Part shown: piece by piece, positions 2,142-37,154 of the stretch | Layout of the letters: each line of letters starts with the position of its first letter | Numbering within the stretch: position 1 is the first letter of the stretch | Sequence record: MT799840.1 | Reading direction: 5' to 3' (one strand) | Length of the DNA stretch: 64,000 bases | Translations under genes and position numbers: made by a program | The notes under the pieces: generated by a model | What the model was told of the DNA's origin: nothing | Databases searched by the model: none | What the model saw: only the letters and a program-made list of their open reading frames with translations

Positions 2142-2217
2142 GGGGGTATGGCGCAATTGGTAGCGCACCGGTCTCCAAAACCGAAGGTTCGAGGTTCGAA
2201 ACCTCGTGCCCCCGCCA
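2142..2217 (+). tRNA. trnW: tRNA-Trp (CCA)
   Basis: Full cloverleaf: acceptor GGGGGTA/TGCCCCC, anticodon loop CTCCAAA, GGTTCGAAACC T-arm, encoded 3' CCA. Confidence 0.95.
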
Positions 2218-3299: not shown

Positions 3300-3300
3300 G

Positions 3301-3367
3301 GCTTTGTAGCTCAGGTAGGTAGAGCAGCCTCTTTGAGGAAGGTCGCCGGTTCGAGACCGGTCAAAGC
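3301..3367 (+). pseudogene. tRNA-like element with collapsed anticodon arm
   Basis: Canonical D-arm (GCTC..GAGC), T-arm (GCCGG TTCGAGA CCGGT) and a 6-bp acceptor. The anticodon arm is 13 nt with a 3-nt TTT loop, and no CCA is encoded. Confidence 0.7.
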
Positions 3368-3369
3368 AA

Positions 3370-3444
3370 GAGCAGCGAAGTTAGAGGAATTAACACCCGA
3401 CTCATAATCGGATATTTCGACGGTTCGAATCCGTCCGTTTGCTC
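3370..3444 (+). tRNA. Degenerate tRNA with CAT anticodon (Met or Ile2)
   Basis: Anticodon arm CCGA-CTCATAA-TCGG and T-arm GACGG-TTCGAAT-CCGTC. Acceptor stem has a bulge, position 8 is A, and no CCA follows directly. Confidence 0.6.
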
Positions 3445-18077: not shown

Positions 18078-20029
18078 GTGAGAAAGGTACCAAAATTCTA
18101 CGGAATATCCGGCCGGTTGGTTAGTCAGGATAACTATTTGTCCGATTTGCAAATAGAAGCTGCTGCCAAAGGTATTAAACCACCCACTATTATTAACGAT
18201 GTCGCCGTTAACGGGGATGCGATCGAGGTTGCTGAACTTATCGATCGCATGGTACAGAACAGAATCGTTGACGAAGAACTGAACTCTGCACCGATTTGTA
18301 GTTTGGATTGTCCGGCACCGATCGCGCATCGTTACAATCTCGGTTGTAAGTGTCCGACGTGTGGCTATGTTGTAACTGAACATCGAATTGAATCCGATGT
18401 CTGGTTACGTGCACCCGATGAAATGGGTAACTTCGTCAACCCACGATTCTGGGCAATGTTCAATGCTTTCTTTAATAGCAAGTTGAAGAAGTTTGAACGT
18501 AACAAGGTCACTATCGAACGCGGTAATGACTTGATGATGTGGATGATTGACCCGTATTACCGTATAGAAGAACCAGACGGTAAACGCGCACATGCTGTGA
18601 AACGTGTATTGGAAGAACATGGTTTCGTTCGTGGCTTGCGCAATCTGGTTGATAACCACGTTAGTATCTTTAACATCCTTACCACGCCAGAAGCCTGGAA
18701 GGAAATCTTCGCACCTAATCGGCATAACGCCGCTGAAGGTGAACGCTTACGTTTACAATGGAAGGAGCTATTCGAAACGCAACGTCACGCATTCTTCCCA
18801 AGACACTTACCGCTAATCTCCTCTAAACTTATCGTTACTGAGGAAGGTCGTCGTGGTGTCATGGTAGACCCAGTGTTCACGGGTGCTATTGACGCGGTGA
18901 AAAATATCGCGTTGCTCTATACGCGGCGTAAAGCGATCGAACCACGTTTTCTGATTAGTCGTGCTTTGAAAGCGAACCGTCAGTTAACGTACTTCCACAT
19001 GGACTTCCGTCGTGAGTCTATGGAAGGTAAACCGGGTGACTATCGCGCGAAATTGGGTTCCACCCATATTCCGTTCGGTGGTCGTGCAACCATCTCACCT
19101 ATCTCAGAACCACACGATGCCTGGAAGTTAAAAGCACCATGGCGTTGGATGGTTGGGTTGATGTCGACCCACATCGAGAACAAACTGCTACGACGGGGTT
19201 ATTCGTCACGGCAGTGTGAACGTATCGTTGCAAAAGCGGCAATGCAGTATGACCCGCTTGTAGATGAAATCTTTAAAGAGCTAATTCGTGAATCCCCAGG
19301 CGGTCTTGGGATCATGGTCATACCGCTACGTAACCCAACGCTGGTACAGTTGTCTATTCAGACGCTGTTCATCGACGAAGTTGTTACCGATGTTAACCAG
19401 TGTTCGCTGCGTATCTCTGACCGTGTGATCAAGATGGCTAACGGTTCGAAAAGAGCCCCATCGGACGGGAAACCTCTGATGCGTATTCTCCTGAAATGCT
19501 GGGAAACCCTAAAGCGTGTCTACCAGAAATGGGGACGAAAGTCTGAAACAACAGATACGATGGCCTACGCTAAACAATACTGCTAACGGTTGTGATAATG
19601 GGTAATCAGCAGCGAAGCCTCGTGAGAGGAACGTTCAACGACTATCGCTGAAATGCGAGTAGGGGTCCCAGTGGACTTCGAAGTGGGAGAACACCTAAGG
19701 CGATAGCTATGGTGAAGATATAGTCTGTGCCTTATCGAGAGATAAGGAGGGTGTCTTAGCACACCTGCTGTATACGGAAACGGTATACGGTGGACAAACA
19801 GGATTTCGATGGCGACCAGTTCCAGGTACGTTTGCCAGTCGATGAAACTGAGATGAAGTTGGCGCTCCAATTCCGTCCAGATAACGGCTTTATGTCTTCT
19901 ACTGATGTGGACCGCGTAGAACACGGCATGGTTTTACATAACGAGCTAATCAGTATGCAGAACCAGTTCCTTATTGAAGCAGATGAGGATGATGAAGAAG
20001 GCATTCCGTTGGAAGCGGTGATGGGCTAA
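18078..20029 (+). CDS. Non-virion RNAP beta-prime N-terminal subunit (phiKZ gp55-like), two exons 18078-19445 + 19802-20029, ~531 aa
   Basis: Zn-ribbon CSLDC..CKCPTC, MEGKPGDYRAKLG, GGRATISP and LRNPTL motifs. Splicing restores the catalytic NGDFDGD. Confidence 0.9.
19446..19801 (+). mobile_element. Group I self-splicing intron, ORF-less (356 nt)
   Basis: P AAATGCTGGGAAA 19494, Q AATCAGCAG 19604, R GTTCAACGACTA 19633, S AAGATATAGTC 19715. P1 hairpin has the U.G pair at the 5' splice site (U19445.G19455). Terminal G19801. Confidence 0.93.
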
Positions 20030-34138: not shown

Positions 34139-36883
34139 ATGGTAGAAATTCAAATGACTTACACGAGTATGGGGGTACGGGTTGAAGTCCCTATCCGCCA
34201 GGCTGAAAGGGCCATACTCGCGTGGGCCGAAGAGAATATGCACGCCCCAAAGATGGGCAAGCAACATGGACGAATAACTACGGAACGCGGTGACGCGTAC
34301 TACGCCCACATTCCGTCTTTAAGGACATTCATTTTCCATAAAGTGTTCGCTGAGAAGATTAAACATATCCTCCAACGCGCAGCAATTGAATATGCTTTTC
34401 AGTACAAGCTTACAGAGCACCATCCCGAACGTGCAGAACCTTATAAGTGCACGTTTGATAATTACGGATTCAAGATGGAAGAGACAGACCCAGAGTCGCG
34501 TTTCTATTATCAGAATGAAGTCGTAGCCGCCGCAACAGATCCATCGCGTTCACAAACGGTTTTCGCGATACAAACAGGAAGAGGAAAAGCTCTCGCGCAG
34601 GGTACGCGTGTGCGTGTACCGGGTGGTTGGAAGAACATTGAGGATATACAGCTAGGTGATTACGTTACGGGGCGTGACGGAAAACCAGCAATGGTCTCTG
34701 GAGTGTTCCCACAGGGTGTGGTTGACCTGTATCAGGTGACGTTTTGGGATGGTAGGAGTGTTGACGTATGTGGCGAGCACTTGTGGCAATCTTTTTACGT
34801 CAACACCACCGAAAAACGCCGTTGGGGTGTTCGTGATACTCTGGAAATGAAGCGTTTAATTTCGATGCCTAATCCACGGGTATACATCCCATTACCAGAA
34901 CCAGAGGAAATGCCAGCTAAGGATTTTGTCATTCATCCGTATTTGCTCGGTATCCTCTTGGGTGATGGCTCCCTATCGATGCCGGGCGTTTTATACACCA
35001 AAGGCGATGTGGAGATTCGTGACCGTGTTGCTGAGGTCATGCCCGCTGGACATGCAATCCATGATTCATCGTACAGCGATGGGATAACGAAGTGCATCTC
35101 TTGTCCCGGTGGTGTTAACCTTGTCCGCAGAGAGCTTGAGCGGTTAGGGTTAATCGGCTGCAGGTCTTGGGAAAAGTTCATACCTGGAGATTACTTCGAA
35201 ACGTCCATCGAACAACGGTGGGAATTGTTGCGCGGATTGATGGATACTGACGGTACTGTGGATAAGGATGGTGGTACGCCTTCTTTCTGTTCCACCAGTA
35301 AAGAATTGGCTTTAGGTGTTCAGGAACTTGTGCGGTCTTTAGGAGGGATTGCAACACTACGCGAGAAACGTCCGTTCTTCACACACAACGGCGAACGTCG
35401 TGAAGGTCGTTTGGCTTATAACGTCTTCATCCGTCACAAAACACCATCGAAACTGTTCCATCTTCCAAGGAAGAAAGAACTGTGTCGTGATAACGGACAA
35501 TACACCGATATACTGAAACTCCGTGTTAAGTCTATCGAACCCATTGGTCGTGATCTTGCCACGTGTATTCGTGTCGAGAACGACGATGCGTTGTTTGTGG
35601 TGGACAAGTGGATTGTTACGCACAACACCAAGACCTGTATGAAGTCGATGGTTAAACGGGGAACCCGTACCGCATTGATTCACCGTCCGTCGTACGTTCC
35701 CAAATGGCTGTTTGACGTCTGTGATGATGAAACAGGACTTCGTATACTTCGTGACGAGGTGTTAGTTTGTACAGGCGTACAGGCGATTTACGACGCACTG
35801 GAGATGGGTAAGTCGGGAGAGCTAGATAGTCGTGGTATTAAGGTAATAATCCTCCCCACGGTCTCTCTACAGCGTTTCCTGAAGGAGTACATTAACACTG
35901 CTGCGACTAACCCTGTGGACCTGGATACGTTTTATGATGTTCTGGGTGTGGGTCTGGTGGCGATGGATGAGGTGCACGAGCATTTTCACCTCGTTTACAT
36001 GGCTGGTATAATGTTGAACCCGCCTGCATCGATAGAAATGTCTGCAACTCTTAAACCGGGTAGCAGCAAAGCGTTTATCGCGGAGCGGTATTTAGAACGG
36101 TTCCCAATGGAGTACCGAATCAGTATTCCAATCATTCCGGTGGTTGACGTGAAAGCGTTGTACTATCGACTGGATGATAAGAAGTTTGCGTGGTGGGCAT
36201 CGAAGATGACGCCGTATAACCACAAACTCTTCGAAGGGAAGCTGATTAAAGAGAACTTGCATTTAGAATACGCAAACATGATCTGGGATGTGGTTGAGAA
36301 ATCGTTCCTTAAACGGTATCAACCTGGCCAAAAATGTTTGATACTCTTTGCTACGGTAGCGATGTGTGAGTTCTTTACCGAGTATGTGAAAGATAAGTTA
36401 TCGCGTGACCCTGTATTCCATCCACTGATGGTGGCGAAATATAATGCAGGCGATTCGTATGACGACTTTATCCAAGCAGACTTCTCTATCTCCACACCGG
36501 GGAAAGCGGGGACTGCGGTCGATAAACCTGGGTTGGTACACATGTACATTTCAACCCCGGTAGAAGACCAGCAACTGAACGAACAGATGGCCGGTCGTCC
36601 ACGTAAGATTCTCCACAACGAGTGGGGTGAAATAGACCCAACGGTGTGGTTATTCCATGCGTATAACGTACCGAAGCATTGCAATTACCTGAATGCCCGC
36701 CAGAAATCACTCAAGGATGTCGTATTGTCGTTCCGTATCGCGACATCCCCCTACGTTGTAAGGAAATCACATGCTCACTCCGCCGCGTCCAGCAGAGCCA
36801 CTGCCACCCTACATCGGAATGACTTTAGCAAGTTTTCTCGAAAACGTTCTAAAGGCGTATCCCGGCGTAGAAGACGTCGCTAA
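34139..36883 (+). CDS. SF2 (DExH) helicase with intein (phiKZ gp75-like)
   Basis: Walker A QTGRGK|T is split by the intein. Also DEVH Walker B, MSAT motif III and QMAGRPR motif VI. Start at ATG 34139. Confidence 0.9.
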   Translation: MVEIQMTYTSMGVRVEVPIRQAERAILAWAEENMHAPKMGKQHGRITTERGDAYYAHIPSLRTFIFHKVFAEKIKHILQRAAIEYAFQYKLTEHHPERAEPYKCTFDNYGFKMEETDPESRFYYQNEVVAAATDPSRSQTVFAIQTGRGKALAQGTRVRVPGGWKNIEDIQLGDYVTGRDGKPAMVSGVFPQGVVDLYQVTFWDGRSVDVCGEHLWQSFYVNTTEKRRWGVRDTLEMKRLISMPNPRVYIPLPEPEEMPAKDFVIHPYLLGILLGDGSLSMPGVLYTKGDVEIRDRVAEVMPAGHAIHDSSYSDGITKCISCPGGVNLVRRELERLGLIGCRSWEKFIPGDYFETSIEQRWELLRGLMDTDGTVDKDGGTPSFCSTSKELALGVQELVRSLGGIATLREKRPFFTHNGERREGRLAYNVFIRHKTPSKLFHLPRKKELCRDNGQYTDILKLRVKSIEPIGRDLATCIRVENDDALFVVDKWIVTHNTKTCMKSMVKRGTRTALIHRPSYVPKWLFDVCDDETGLRILRDEVLVCTGVQAIYDALEMGKSGELDSRGIKVIILPTVSLQRFLKEYINTAATNPVDLDTFYDVLGVGLVAMDEVHEHFHLVYMAGIMLNPPASIEMSATLKPGSSKAFIAERYLERFPMEYRISIPIIPVVDVKALYYRLDDKKFAWWASKMTPYNHKLFEGKLIKENLHLEYANMIWDVVEKSFLKRYQPGQKCLILFATVAMCEFFTEYVKDKLSRDPVFHPLMVAKYNAGDSYDDFIQADFSISTPGKAGTAVDKPGLVHMYISTPVEDQQLNEQMAGRPRKILHNEWGEIDPTVWLFHAYNVPKHCNYLNARQKSLKDVVLSFRIATSPYVVRKSHAHSAASSRATATLHRNDFSKFSRKRSKGVSRRRRRR
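34589..35626 (+). mobile_element. Class 3 intein with LAGLIDADG homing endonuclease (346 aa)
   Basis: Begins ALAQGTRV and ends WIVTHN|T. Block B CGEHLW, block F ATCIRV, and LLGILLGDGS / LLRGLMDTDG endonuclease motifs. Confidence 0.92.
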
Positions 36884-37154
36884 GAAACTCTGCACCGACG
36901 CCACTATCAACCAGGCGTTTCACTACTACATGGTCACTGAACATTACAGCGGCCTGTTCCTTAACCAACGCGGGTTGACGTATTACGTCACCCGCACGTC
37001 AAGTATCCGTAACACTTCGTCGTACGAGTTATATACGTACGTGTTGTGGAATGAGAACCCGGCCGGTAGTGTCGATCAGAATCCAAAGATGGCTTATCGT
37101 CTTTACTCTGAAAAATGGCATGATTGGGTGACTGTTCCACACGATGCAAGTTAA
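36771..37154 (+). CDS. Hypothetical protein overlapping the helicase 3' end
   Basis: AAGGA RBS, 127 aa, 113-nt overlap. Confidence 0.7.
   Translation: MLTPPRPAEPLPPYIGMTLASFLENVLKAYPGVEDVAKKLCTDATINQAFHYYMVTEHYSGLFLNQRGLTYYVTRTSSIRNTSSYELYTYVLWNENPAGSVDQNPKMAYRLYSEKWHDWVTVPHDAS

What the first reader, a model, noticed from the sequence alone, without database searches (positions are those of the whole stretch)
34589..35626. Class 3 (non-canonical) intein with homing endonuclease in the helicase P-loop
It starts with Ala rather than Cys/Ser and carries the class 3 WCT triad (W in CGEHLW, C in ATCIRV, T in VTHN), with Thr as the +1 nucleophile. Excision restores GRGKT. Both LAGLIDADG motifs look intact, so it may still home and interfere with co-infecting relatives. 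Together with the intron, two essential genes within 17 kb need post-transcriptional or post-translational splicing.
Basis: partly seen in the sequence, partly recalled or inferred. Interest (0 to 1): 0.65.

Follow-up and report, generated by a model that had tools for sequence, protein, structure and literature searches.

The report
Class 3 intein in phage helicase
A giant Salmonella phage's helicase gene is interrupted, inside its ATP-binding loop, by a self-removing protein insert (a class 3 intein with an apparently working homing nuclease); it is real and unannotated, but it belongs to a very large and well-described family.

Summary
The window is Salmonella jumbo phage JN03 (Seoulvirus). 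Bases 34589-35626 encode a 346-residue intein between Lys and Thr of the helicase Walker A motif (GRGK|T). Seven intein-less relatives lack exactly these 1038 bases and read GRGKT or GAGKS.

The intein starts with Ala. It aligns end to end with the experimentally proven class 3 intein of mycobacteriophage Bethlehem. Its W66, C326 and T344 fall on that intein's Trp-Cys-Thr triplet, and the +1 residue is Thr.

In 114 related inteins at the same site, residue 1 takes 12 different values. His, Trp, Cys, His and Asn of the splicing blocks are invariant, and the block G Thr is kept in 113.

The model (pLDDT 94.7) matches PI-SceI and two solved class 3 inteins. Both LAGLIDADG aspartates are present, and differences between copies are mostly synonymous.

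New here:
- In near-identical phages the same intein starts Ala-Leu or Cys-Cys.
- A second intein lineage, 59% identical and starting with Val, sits at the same site.
- The flanks are mosaic, which fits ongoing homing.

Splicing chemistry and nuclease activity are inferred, not shown. This scan has noted the same kind of intein on other phage DNA. Verdict: an ordinary new member of a known kind.

The parts
34139..36883 (+). Helicase precursor CDS (914 aa): N-extein + intein + C-extein
   Evidence: Open frame and GenBank annotation. Both exteins hit phrog_16 'DNA helicase'.
34139..34588 (+). N-extein (150 aa), ending in the first part of Walker A (QTGRGK, 34571-34588)
   Evidence: phrog_16 E 1.2e-27; alignment to intein-less alleles.
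34589..35626 (+). Class 3 intein, 346 aa (HINT splicing domain with an inserted LAGLIDADG endonuclease domain)
   Evidence: Exact indel against seven intein-less alleles. Pfam. End-to-end match to the Bethlehem class 3 intein. AF2 model pLDDT 94.7 and PI-SceI / DnaBi1 fold matches.
34589..34591 (+). Ala1 (GCT), a non-nucleophilic first residue; Cys in EC001/Lh1B and Val in the second intein lineage
34763..34789 (+). Block B: C61 (B:7), H64 (B:10), W66 (B:12, Trp of the triplet)
   Evidence: Aligned to H65/W67 of the Bethlehem and M. smegmatis DnaBi1 inteins. His and Trp are 114/114 in the family.
34940..34972 (+). LAGLIDADG motif 1 (block C) with D126 (34964-34966)
   Evidence: (Asp in 100 of 114, Asn in 14).
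35225..35257 (+). LAGLIDADG motif 2 (block E) with D221 (35249-35251)
   Evidence: Pfam LAGLIDADG_3; Asp in 114/114.
35555..35602 (+). Block F with C326 (F:4; 35564-35566), the predicted initiating nucleophile
   Evidence: Aligned to C320 of the Bethlehem intein and C118 of DnaBi1; 114/114.
35606..35626 (+). Block G: T344 (G:5), H345, N346 (cyclising Asn)
   Evidence: Thr 113/114; His and Asn 114/114.
35627..36883 (+). C-extein (418 aa): Thr+1 (35627-35629) completes GRGK-T; DEVH (35966-35977) and SAT (36041-36049) helicase motifs
   Evidence: phrog_16 E 1.3e-28; motifs located; +1 is Thr in 109 and Ser in 4 family members.
34426..34588 (+). Mosaic upstream extein tract, 17-32% divergent from most Seoulvirus alleles; in this sample found only in intein-bearing genomes
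34790..34852 (+). Patch private to JN03 inside the intein (codons 68-88): 14 codons differ from the four other copies, 2 of them non-synonymous

Best explanation
34589-35626 is a mobile class 3 intein with a LAGLIDADG homing endonuclease. It sits between the invariant Lys and Thr of the Walker A loop of a core SF2-type helicase of the nucleus-forming Salmonella phage JN03. The 914-residue precursor cannot form its ATP site until the intein removes itself. Splicing most likely runs in four steps. First, C326 (block F, position 4), helped by H64 and W66, attacks the Lys(-1)-Ala1 peptide bond and forms a thioester branch. Second, the N-extein is passed to the hydroxyl of Thr+1. Third, N346 cyclises and frees the 346-residue intein. 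Fourth, an O-to-N shift gives the 568-residue helicase with GRGKT. The freed intein probably cuts intein-less helicase alleles of co-infecting Seoulvirus phages, and repair copies the intein in together with short flanks. Shown here: the anatomy, the exact indel, the residue correspondence to proven class 3 inteins, the fold, the family-wide conservation pattern, the purifying selection and the mosaic flanks. Inferred: the chemistry and the cleavage activity.
For: Exact 1038-nt presence/absence in genomes about 96-98% identical across the shared helicase sequence, 5 of 40 phage records bearing the intein. The class 3 definition is taken from PMC2807308 and PMC5050341: no nucleophile at residue 1, plus Trp B:12, Cys F:4 and Thr G:5. 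All are met. BLASTP to the Bethlehem gp11 intein (the characterised 'MP-Be DnaB' intein) gives E 6e-29 end to end, with W66, C326, T344, H345 and N346 on W67, C320, T339, H340 and N341. phmmer hits the solved class 3 DnaBi1 intein 6bs8. The AF2 model has pLDDT 94.7 and pTM 0.92. Foldseek finds PI-SceI (TM 0.74), 6bs8 (TM 0.79) and 6rix (TM 0.83). In 114 family representatives residue 1 is A62, C13, S11, M10, V5 and seven others, whereas His, Trp, Cys, His and Asn are 114/114 and Thr is 113/114. At least 20 switches between a nucleophilic and a non-nucleophilic residue 1 are needed on the tree. The plaque-forming isolates JN03, SPLA3 and SPLA5c carry Ala1, while EC001 and Lh1B carry Cys1 in an otherwise ~99% identical intein. 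Differences between copies are 18-23 synonymous against 4-6 non-synonymous codons. Seven of seven intein-bearing alleles share the flank codons AGA GGA ... ACC AAG ACC, and none of seven intein-less alleles has them.
Against: No experiment: neither splicing, nor the block F branched intermediate, nor DNA cleavage has been observed for this intein. Extein haplotypes and intein variants occur in nearly all combinations, so some of the mosaic may come from ordinary recombination rather than homing. The flank-marker association is not phylogenetically independent. Composition gives no sign of recent foreign origin (GC 0.49 against 0.47-0.48).
Confidence: 0.88

Rival explanations
1. The intein splices, but its endonuclease is no longer active. 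The intein is now inherited only vertically or moved passively by general phage recombination.
For: Extein haplotypes and intein forms are shuffled in nearly all combinations. Seoulvirus genomes are mosaic elsewhere in the region too. D126 is Asn in 14 of 114 relatives, so decay does occur in the family.
Against: Both catalytic Asp residues are present. Many endonuclease-domain residues are invariant down to 34% identity. In codons 100-300, JN03 and EC001 differ by 10 synonymous and 1 non-synonymous codon. Immediate flank markers are perfectly associated with intein presence.
Confidence: 0.25
2. It splices by the class 2 (KlbA-type) route, in which Thr+1 attacks the N-terminal junction directly and C326 plays no covalent role.
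For: Ala1, as in KlbA inteins.
Against: KlbA inteins lack the Trp-Cys-Thr triplet (PMC2807308). Here the triplet is present and essentially invariant in the family, and the intein is homologous to proven class 3 inteins.
Confidence: 0.05
3. It is a dead insert: the precursor is never processed, and the helicase is dispensable or works with the insert in place.
For: No direct evidence of processing. The precise role of this helicase is unknown (bioRxiv 10.1101/2023.02.24.529968).
Against: The insert splits the Walker A loop of a conserved core gene. Splicing residues are invariant across more than 100 sequence clusters. Purifying selection acts on the intein. Five isolated phages carry it.
Confidence: 0.03

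Closest known systems
Mycobacteriophage Bethlehem 'DnaB' intein (MP-Be DnaB; in gp11), the founding class 3 intein (Tori et al. 2010, PMC2807308)
   Same: Full-length intein of nearly the same size (341 against 346 aa) with a LAGLIDADG domain. No nucleophile at residue 1. His B:10, Trp B:12, Cys F:4 and Thr-His-Asn at the C-terminus, with Thr+1. Phage-borne. Aligns end to end (29% identity, E 6e-29).
   Different: Starts with Pro, not Ala. Block B position 7 is Ser there and Cys (C61) here. The host protein and site differ: Gln(-1) there, against the Walker A Lys of an SF2 helicase here.
Mycobacterium smegmatis DnaBi1 (PDB 6bs8) and M. chimaera DnaB1 (6rix) class 3 inteins
   Same: Start Ala-Leu-Ala, inserted in a helicase P-loop, carry the Trp-Cys-Thr triplet, and the splicing domain superposes (TM 0.79-0.83 over the target).
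   Different: They are mini-inteins without an endonuclease, cellular rather than phage-borne, sit in a DnaB (RecA-type) helicase, have Asp at block B position 7, and have Ser+1.
PI-SceI (yeast VMA1 intein) and other intein-borne LAGLIDADG endonucleases
   Same: Two-domain architecture, two LAGLIDADG motifs in one chain, best whole-model fold match (TM 0.68-0.74, E 1e-17).
   Different: PI-SceI is a class 1 intein (Cys1, Cys+1), is larger (454 aa) and has an extra DNA-recognition region.
Homologous inteins at the same GK|T site in other jumbo-phage helicases (Erwinia Kwan gp48 and Rebecca gp251, Xanthomonas RTH11, Pseudomonas PhiPA3 gp233 and EL ORF039)
   Same: Same insertion point, same length class (342-366 aa), same VTHN end, 41-58% identity.
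   Different: Different first residues (Val or Ala). Some sit in a different helicase paralogue (PhiPA3 gp233, the SNF2-domain helicase related to phiKZ gp203).

Membership tests
Class 3 intein | No Cys/Ser/Thr nucleophile at intein residue 1 | tested here: met
   Ala1, GCT at 34589-34591. Definition from PMC5050341 and PMC2807308.
Class 3 intein | Trp at block B position 12, two residues after His B:10 | tested here: met
   H64 and W66 align with H65/W67 of the Bethlehem and DnaBi1 inteins; 114/114 in the family.
Class 3 intein | Cys at block F position 4 | tested here: met
   C326 aligns with C320 (Bethlehem) and C118 (DnaBi1); 114/114.
Class 3 intein | Thr at block G position 5, a C-terminal Asn, and a Ser/Thr (rarely Cys) +1 residue | tested here: met
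   T344-H345-N346 followed by Thr+1.
Class 3 intein | Splicing starts with attack by the block F Cys (block F branched intermediate; obligate Cys) | not testable with these tools
   Needs C326 mutants and detection of the intermediate. Indirect support comes from free variation of residue 1 beside an invariant C326.
Class 3 intein | HINT fold of the splicing domain | tested here: met
   AF2 pLDDT 94.7. Foldseek matches 6bs8 (TM 0.79) and 6rix (TM 0.83) over the target.
LAGLIDADG homing endonuclease (single-chain, two motifs) | Two LAGLIDADG helices, each with its catalytic acidic residue | tested here: met
   D126 and D221. Pfam LAGLIDADG_3 at 42 bits against a 22.5 cut-off, and Hom_end at 22.1 against 21.1.
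LAGLIDADG homing endonuclease (single-chain, two motifs) | Endonuclease fold | tested here: met
   Foldseek matches PI-SceI, PI-PfuI, the TliVMA intein and I-DmoI.
LAGLIDADG homing endonuclease (single-chain, two motifs) | Site-specific cleavage of the intein-less allele, and homing | not testable with these tools
   Indirect only: sporadic presence, flank markers linked to presence, purifying selection.
SF2 helicase (host protein; phrog_16) | Motif I (Walker A), motif II (DExH) and motif III (SAT), plus a family profile match | tested here: met
   QTGRGK|T, DEVH and SAT. The intein-less orthologue hits phrog_16 at E 3.8e-58.
SF2 helicase (host protein; phrog_16) | Pfam helicase domain above the gathering score | tested here: inconclusive
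   ResIII 13.4 bits (cut-off 22.5) and DEAD 12.5-14.1 bits (cut-off 26).
Class 2 (KlbA-type) intein | Ala1 without the Trp-Cys-Thr triplet | tested here: not met
   The triplet is present.
Class 1 intein | Cys/Ser/Thr at residue 1 | tested here: not met
   Ala1 in JN03. The near-identical copy in EC001/Lh1B does have Cys1.

The most novel reading that the evidence does not exclude
One homing site in the Seoulvirus population holds at least four co-circulating states: empty; intein lineage alpha starting Ala-Leu; alpha starting Cys-Cys; and lineage beta starting Val-Cys, only 59% identical. The flanks are shuffled among them. This would be a live homing cycle with intein-by-intein replacement inside nucleus-forming phages. 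In that reading the endonuclease acts as an interference weapon during co-infection, as reported for an intron endonuclease of PhiPA3-like phages. The near-isogenic Ala1/Cys1 pair would also be a natural test of whether class 1 and class 3 chemistry can interconvert in one step. A further untested idea is that C61 (block B position 7; Cys in 78 of 114 relatives) forms a redox-sensitive disulfide with C326 that gates helicase maturation.
Probability: 0.25. Interest if true: 0.55.

Novelty: new member of a known kind. Interest (0 to 1): 0.33.

Why it matters
It corrects the annotation. The gene encodes a helicase plus a mobile intein, and in related records the intein has led automatic pipelines to label the gene 'terminase large subunit', 'DarB-like antirestriction' or 'RNA polymerase beta subunit'.

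For intein biology, the Seoulvirus population offers a convenient natural series in plaque-forming phages of laboratory hosts. The same intein occurs with Ala1 or Cys1, a second lineage has Val1, and there are empty sites. With these, the class 3 mechanism, homing and phage-phage interference could be tested directly.

It does not reveal a new mechanism. Class 3 inteins in phage and helicase P-loops have been described since 2010.

Tried and rejected
1. I first took Bethlehem gp52 (phosphoesterase) for the reference class 3 intein. Its intein starts with Cys and ends GN|S, so it is a different one. The characterised intein lies in gp11.

2. Tori & Perler 2011 (PMC3133030) and Brace et al. 2010 (PMC2923505) are not held. 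What I say about them rests on citations in other papers.

3. I first read 34426-34588 as one simple co-conversion tract brought in with the intein. I rejected that strict form because database members show extein haplotypes and intein forms in nearly all combinations. What remains is an association of that haplotype, and of the immediate flank codons, with intein presence.

4. Base composition shows no foreign signature.

5. Papers on JN03 relatives (Lh1B; the EC001 announcement) and on jumbo phages do not mention this intein.

6. The search of earlier findings by whole genome returned unrelated phage notes.

The exteins were searched separately by reference, and natural intein-less orthologues (SEGD1, SPN3US) served as the uninterrupted form.

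8. Not run, because the question did not need them: the large representative-protein search, sequencing-run and read tools, and complex prediction.

9. The structure tool returns no coordinates, so distances from C326 to the splice junctions and to C61 could not be measured.
Full report
IDENTITY OF THE WINDOW. The helicase region matches Salmonella phage JN03 (MT799840.1, genus Seoulvirus, an SPN3US-like jumbo phage of 241 kb) at 100% identity, with the same coordinates as the window. The finding lies in one annotated CDS, 34139-36883 (+), 'putative ATP-dependent DNA helicase'. That CDS directly follows a subunit of the phage's multi-subunit RNA polymerase.

THE OBSERVATION. Translation of 34589-35626 gives 346 residues. 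They start Ala-Leu-Ala-Gln and end Val-Thr-His-Asn, followed by Thr.
- The residue before the insert is the Lys of QTGRGK.
- Pfam finds LAGLIDADG_3 (42 bits; cut-off 22.5), Hom_end (22.1; cut-off 21.1) and, below threshold, the N-terminus of Hom_end_hint.
- Neither extein hits Pfam on its own. Both hit PHROG 16, 'DNA helicase': the N-extein at profile positions 66-215 and the C-extein at 322-629.
- The natural intein-less orthologue of phage SEGD1 hits the same profile continuously (E 3.8e-58). It has only sub-threshold Pfam ResIII and DEAD matches.
- The C-extein carries DEVH and SAT motifs. The host is therefore an SF2-type helicase.

THE INSERT IS A DISCRETE ELEMENT. Of 40 phage records that match the gene, five cover it fully: JN03, SPLA3, SPLA5c, EC001 and Lh1B. 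The others match over a span exactly 1038 nt shorter. MAFFT alignments with seven intein-less alleles place a single gap at 34589-35626 in every case. The uninterrupted genes read GRGK-TKS (SEGD1 type) or GAGK-SKS (SPN3US type).

CLASS 3 MEMBERSHIP. Two papers define class 3 inteins: no nucleophile at residue 1, plus a Trp-Cys-Thr triplet at block B position 12, block F position 4 and block G position 5. The +1 residue is usually Ser or Thr, and the location is typically an ATPase P-loop of helicases or phage terminases (PMC2807308; PMC5050341). The insertion between the invariant Lys and Thr is called the 'classic' P-loop site.
- I located the experimentally characterised Bethlehem intein in gp11 of that phage. 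It is 341 residues long and ends LTHN|TKNTFSLFPI, as in the paper.
- It aligns with the JN03 intein from residue 2 to the last residue (29% identity, E 6e-29).
- JN03 H64, W66, C326, T344, H345 and N346 fall on Bethlehem H65, W67, C320, T339, H340 and N341.
- The solved class 3 M. smegmatis DnaBi1 intein (6bs8) is also hit. It has the same Ala-Leu-Ala start and matching His-x-Trp, Cys and Thr-His-Asn positions.
- An AlphaFold2 model built on 55 sequences is confident (pLDDT 94.7, pTM 0.92).
- Foldseek ranks PI-SceI first for the whole model (TM 0.68-0.74). It matches the splicing domain to 6bs8 and 6rix (TM 0.79 and 0.83 over the target) and the inserted domain to I-DmoI-type LAGLIDADG enzymes.

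FAMILY-WIDE TEST OF THE MECHANISM. A word-index search restricted to the intein found at least 1429 proteins with E <= 1e-10. Most are 850-915-residue jumbo-phage helicases. A few are PhoH, AAA-protease or SNF2 hosts. I analysed 114 cluster representatives with the intein directly after Gly-Lys.
- Residue 1 is Ala 62, Cys 13, Ser 11, Met 10, Val 5, plus Arg, Gly, Gln, Leu, Glu, Phe and Pro. Only 21% are nucleophilic.
- His B:10, Trp B:12, Cys F:4, His G:6 and Asn G:7 are 114/114, and Thr G:5 is 113/114.
- The +1 residue is Thr in 109 and Ser in 4.
- On a tree built without the first three residues, the 24 nucleophile-bearing tips need at least 20 changes of state.
- Residue 1 is thus free to vary while C326 is fixed. 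That pattern is expected if C326, not residue 1, starts the reaction. It is comparative support, not proof.

THE ENDONUCLEASE. Both LAGLIDADG motifs keep their acidic residue, D126 and D221. D221 is invariant in the family, and D126 is Asp in 100 of 114. Many endonuclease-domain positions are invariant down to 34% identity, among them K196, R210, D219, D221 and G222. Among the five Seoulvirus copies, 18-23 codons differ synonymously and only 4-6 non-synonymously. In codons 100-300 the split between JN03 and EC001 is 10 to 1. The domain is therefore under purifying selection. Cleavage itself is untested.

SIGNS OF MOBILITY, AND WHAT IS NEW.
1. The intein body is about 99% identical in the five phages, but its first two codons are dimorphic. 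JN03, SPLA3 and SPLA5c have GCT CTC (Ala-Leu). EC001 and Lh1B have TGC TGT (Cys-Cys). Both forms are common among 14 further database members: 5 Ala-Leu and 9 Cys-Cys.
2. A second intein lineage of the same length starts Val-Cys and is only 59% identical. It occupies the same site in helicases whose exteins are 98-99% identical to JN03. This is cluster P0028 with 56 member sequences, mostly ~240 kb contigs in Salmonella assemblies.
3. All seven intein-bearing alleles examined share the flank codons AGA GGA upstream and ACC AAG ACC downstream. All seven empty alleles differ at these positions.
4. JN03, SPLA3 and SPLA5c carry a 163-nt upstream tract (34426-34588) that is 17-32% divergent from most alleles. 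In my sample it occurs only in intein-bearing genomes of either lineage. It is shuffled with the other haplotype in database members.
5. JN03's intein has a private patch, codons 68-88, that is almost wholly synonymous. This suggests gene conversion from another intein copy.
6. The intein-less SPN3US and SPLA1a alleles form a third haplotype that is divergent on both sides of the site.

Together these findings fit repeated homing with variable co-conversion, followed by ordinary recombination. They do not prove it, and the flank association is not phylogenetically independent.

THE HOST GENE. Its position directly after a subunit gene of the phage's own RNA polymerase, and its homology to Rebecca gp251 (species Agricanvirus ray), make it the counterpart of Erwinia phage RAY gp250. 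That protein is described as a core, nucleus-localised SWI/SNF-family (SF2) helicase of unknown role (bioRxiv 10.1101/2023.02.24.529968). 'Essential' is therefore an inference from conservation. The companion intron is real: Rfam group I intron, 19426-19747, 68.6 bits.

PRIOR KNOWLEDGE AND NOVELTY. Class 3 inteins in P-loops of helicases and phage terminases, and triplet-bearing inteins that still have Ser1 or Cys1, were described in 2010. No paper I could search mentions this intein in Seoulvirus phages or in jumbo-phage helicases. The GenBank record does not annotate it. Earlier notes of this scan report the same kind of intein in helicase P-loops of other jumbo phages and judged them ordinary. 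I agree for this one. It is a new, intact member of a known kind, with a population-level twist (Ala1/Cys1/Val1 variants, two lineages and empty sites) that makes it a handy experimental system.

LIMITS. I did not build the joined extein sequence. Natural intein-less orthologues were used instead. No coordinates of the model were available, so active-site distances were not measured. No read-level or expression data were used.

Noticed in passing
window 19426-19747 (+): Group I intron (Rfam RF00028, 68.6 bits, full model), about 15 kb upstream of the intein.
   Followed up: partly
L021 3001-5745; L022 311-3055: A second intein lineage (346 aa, starts Val-Cys, 59% identical to JN03's) sits at the identical site of a Seoulvirus helicase whose exteins are 98-99% identical to JN03. 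Its cluster has 56 member sequences.
   Followed up: partly
L014 and L015 (EC001, Lh1B), intein codons 1-2: The same intein (~99% identical) begins Cys-Cys instead of Ala-Leu: six base changes within six bases.
   Followed up: yes
L002 and L020 (SPN3US, SPLA1a), equivalent to window 34470-34588 and 35627-36180: These intein-less alleles carry a third haplotype, 15-39% divergent on both sides of the empty site (GAGK-SKSF). It may be an old import or a cleavage-resistant target.
   Followed up: no
Protein clusters P0002, P0028 and P0150-P0165: Dozens of ~240 kb Seoulvirus contigs sit inside public Salmonella enterica and E. coli isolate assemblies. This suggests a carrier state or carried-over phage in sequenced cultures.
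   Followed up: no
L012, L013 and several RefSeq records: The intein misleads automatic annotation. The helicase is labelled 'terminase large subunit', 'DarB-like antirestriction', 'RNA polymerase beta subunit' or 'gyrA'. Several PHROG profiles (e.g. 19299, 15, 510) contain intein sequence.
   Followed up: partly
window 36771-37154 (+): An annotated hypothetical ORF overlaps the last 113 nt of the helicase gene in another frame. It is annotated in some relatives and not in others.
   Followed up: no
window 2142-2214, 3300-3369, 3372-3443 (+): Three tRNA matches (Rfam RF00005), two of them weak (37 and 31 bits).
   Followed up: no
window 34769-34771 (C61): Block B position 7 is Cys (CxxH instead of the usual TxxH) here and in 78 of 114 relatives. 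It should lie next to the catalytic C326, so it is a possible disulfide partner.
   Followed up: no
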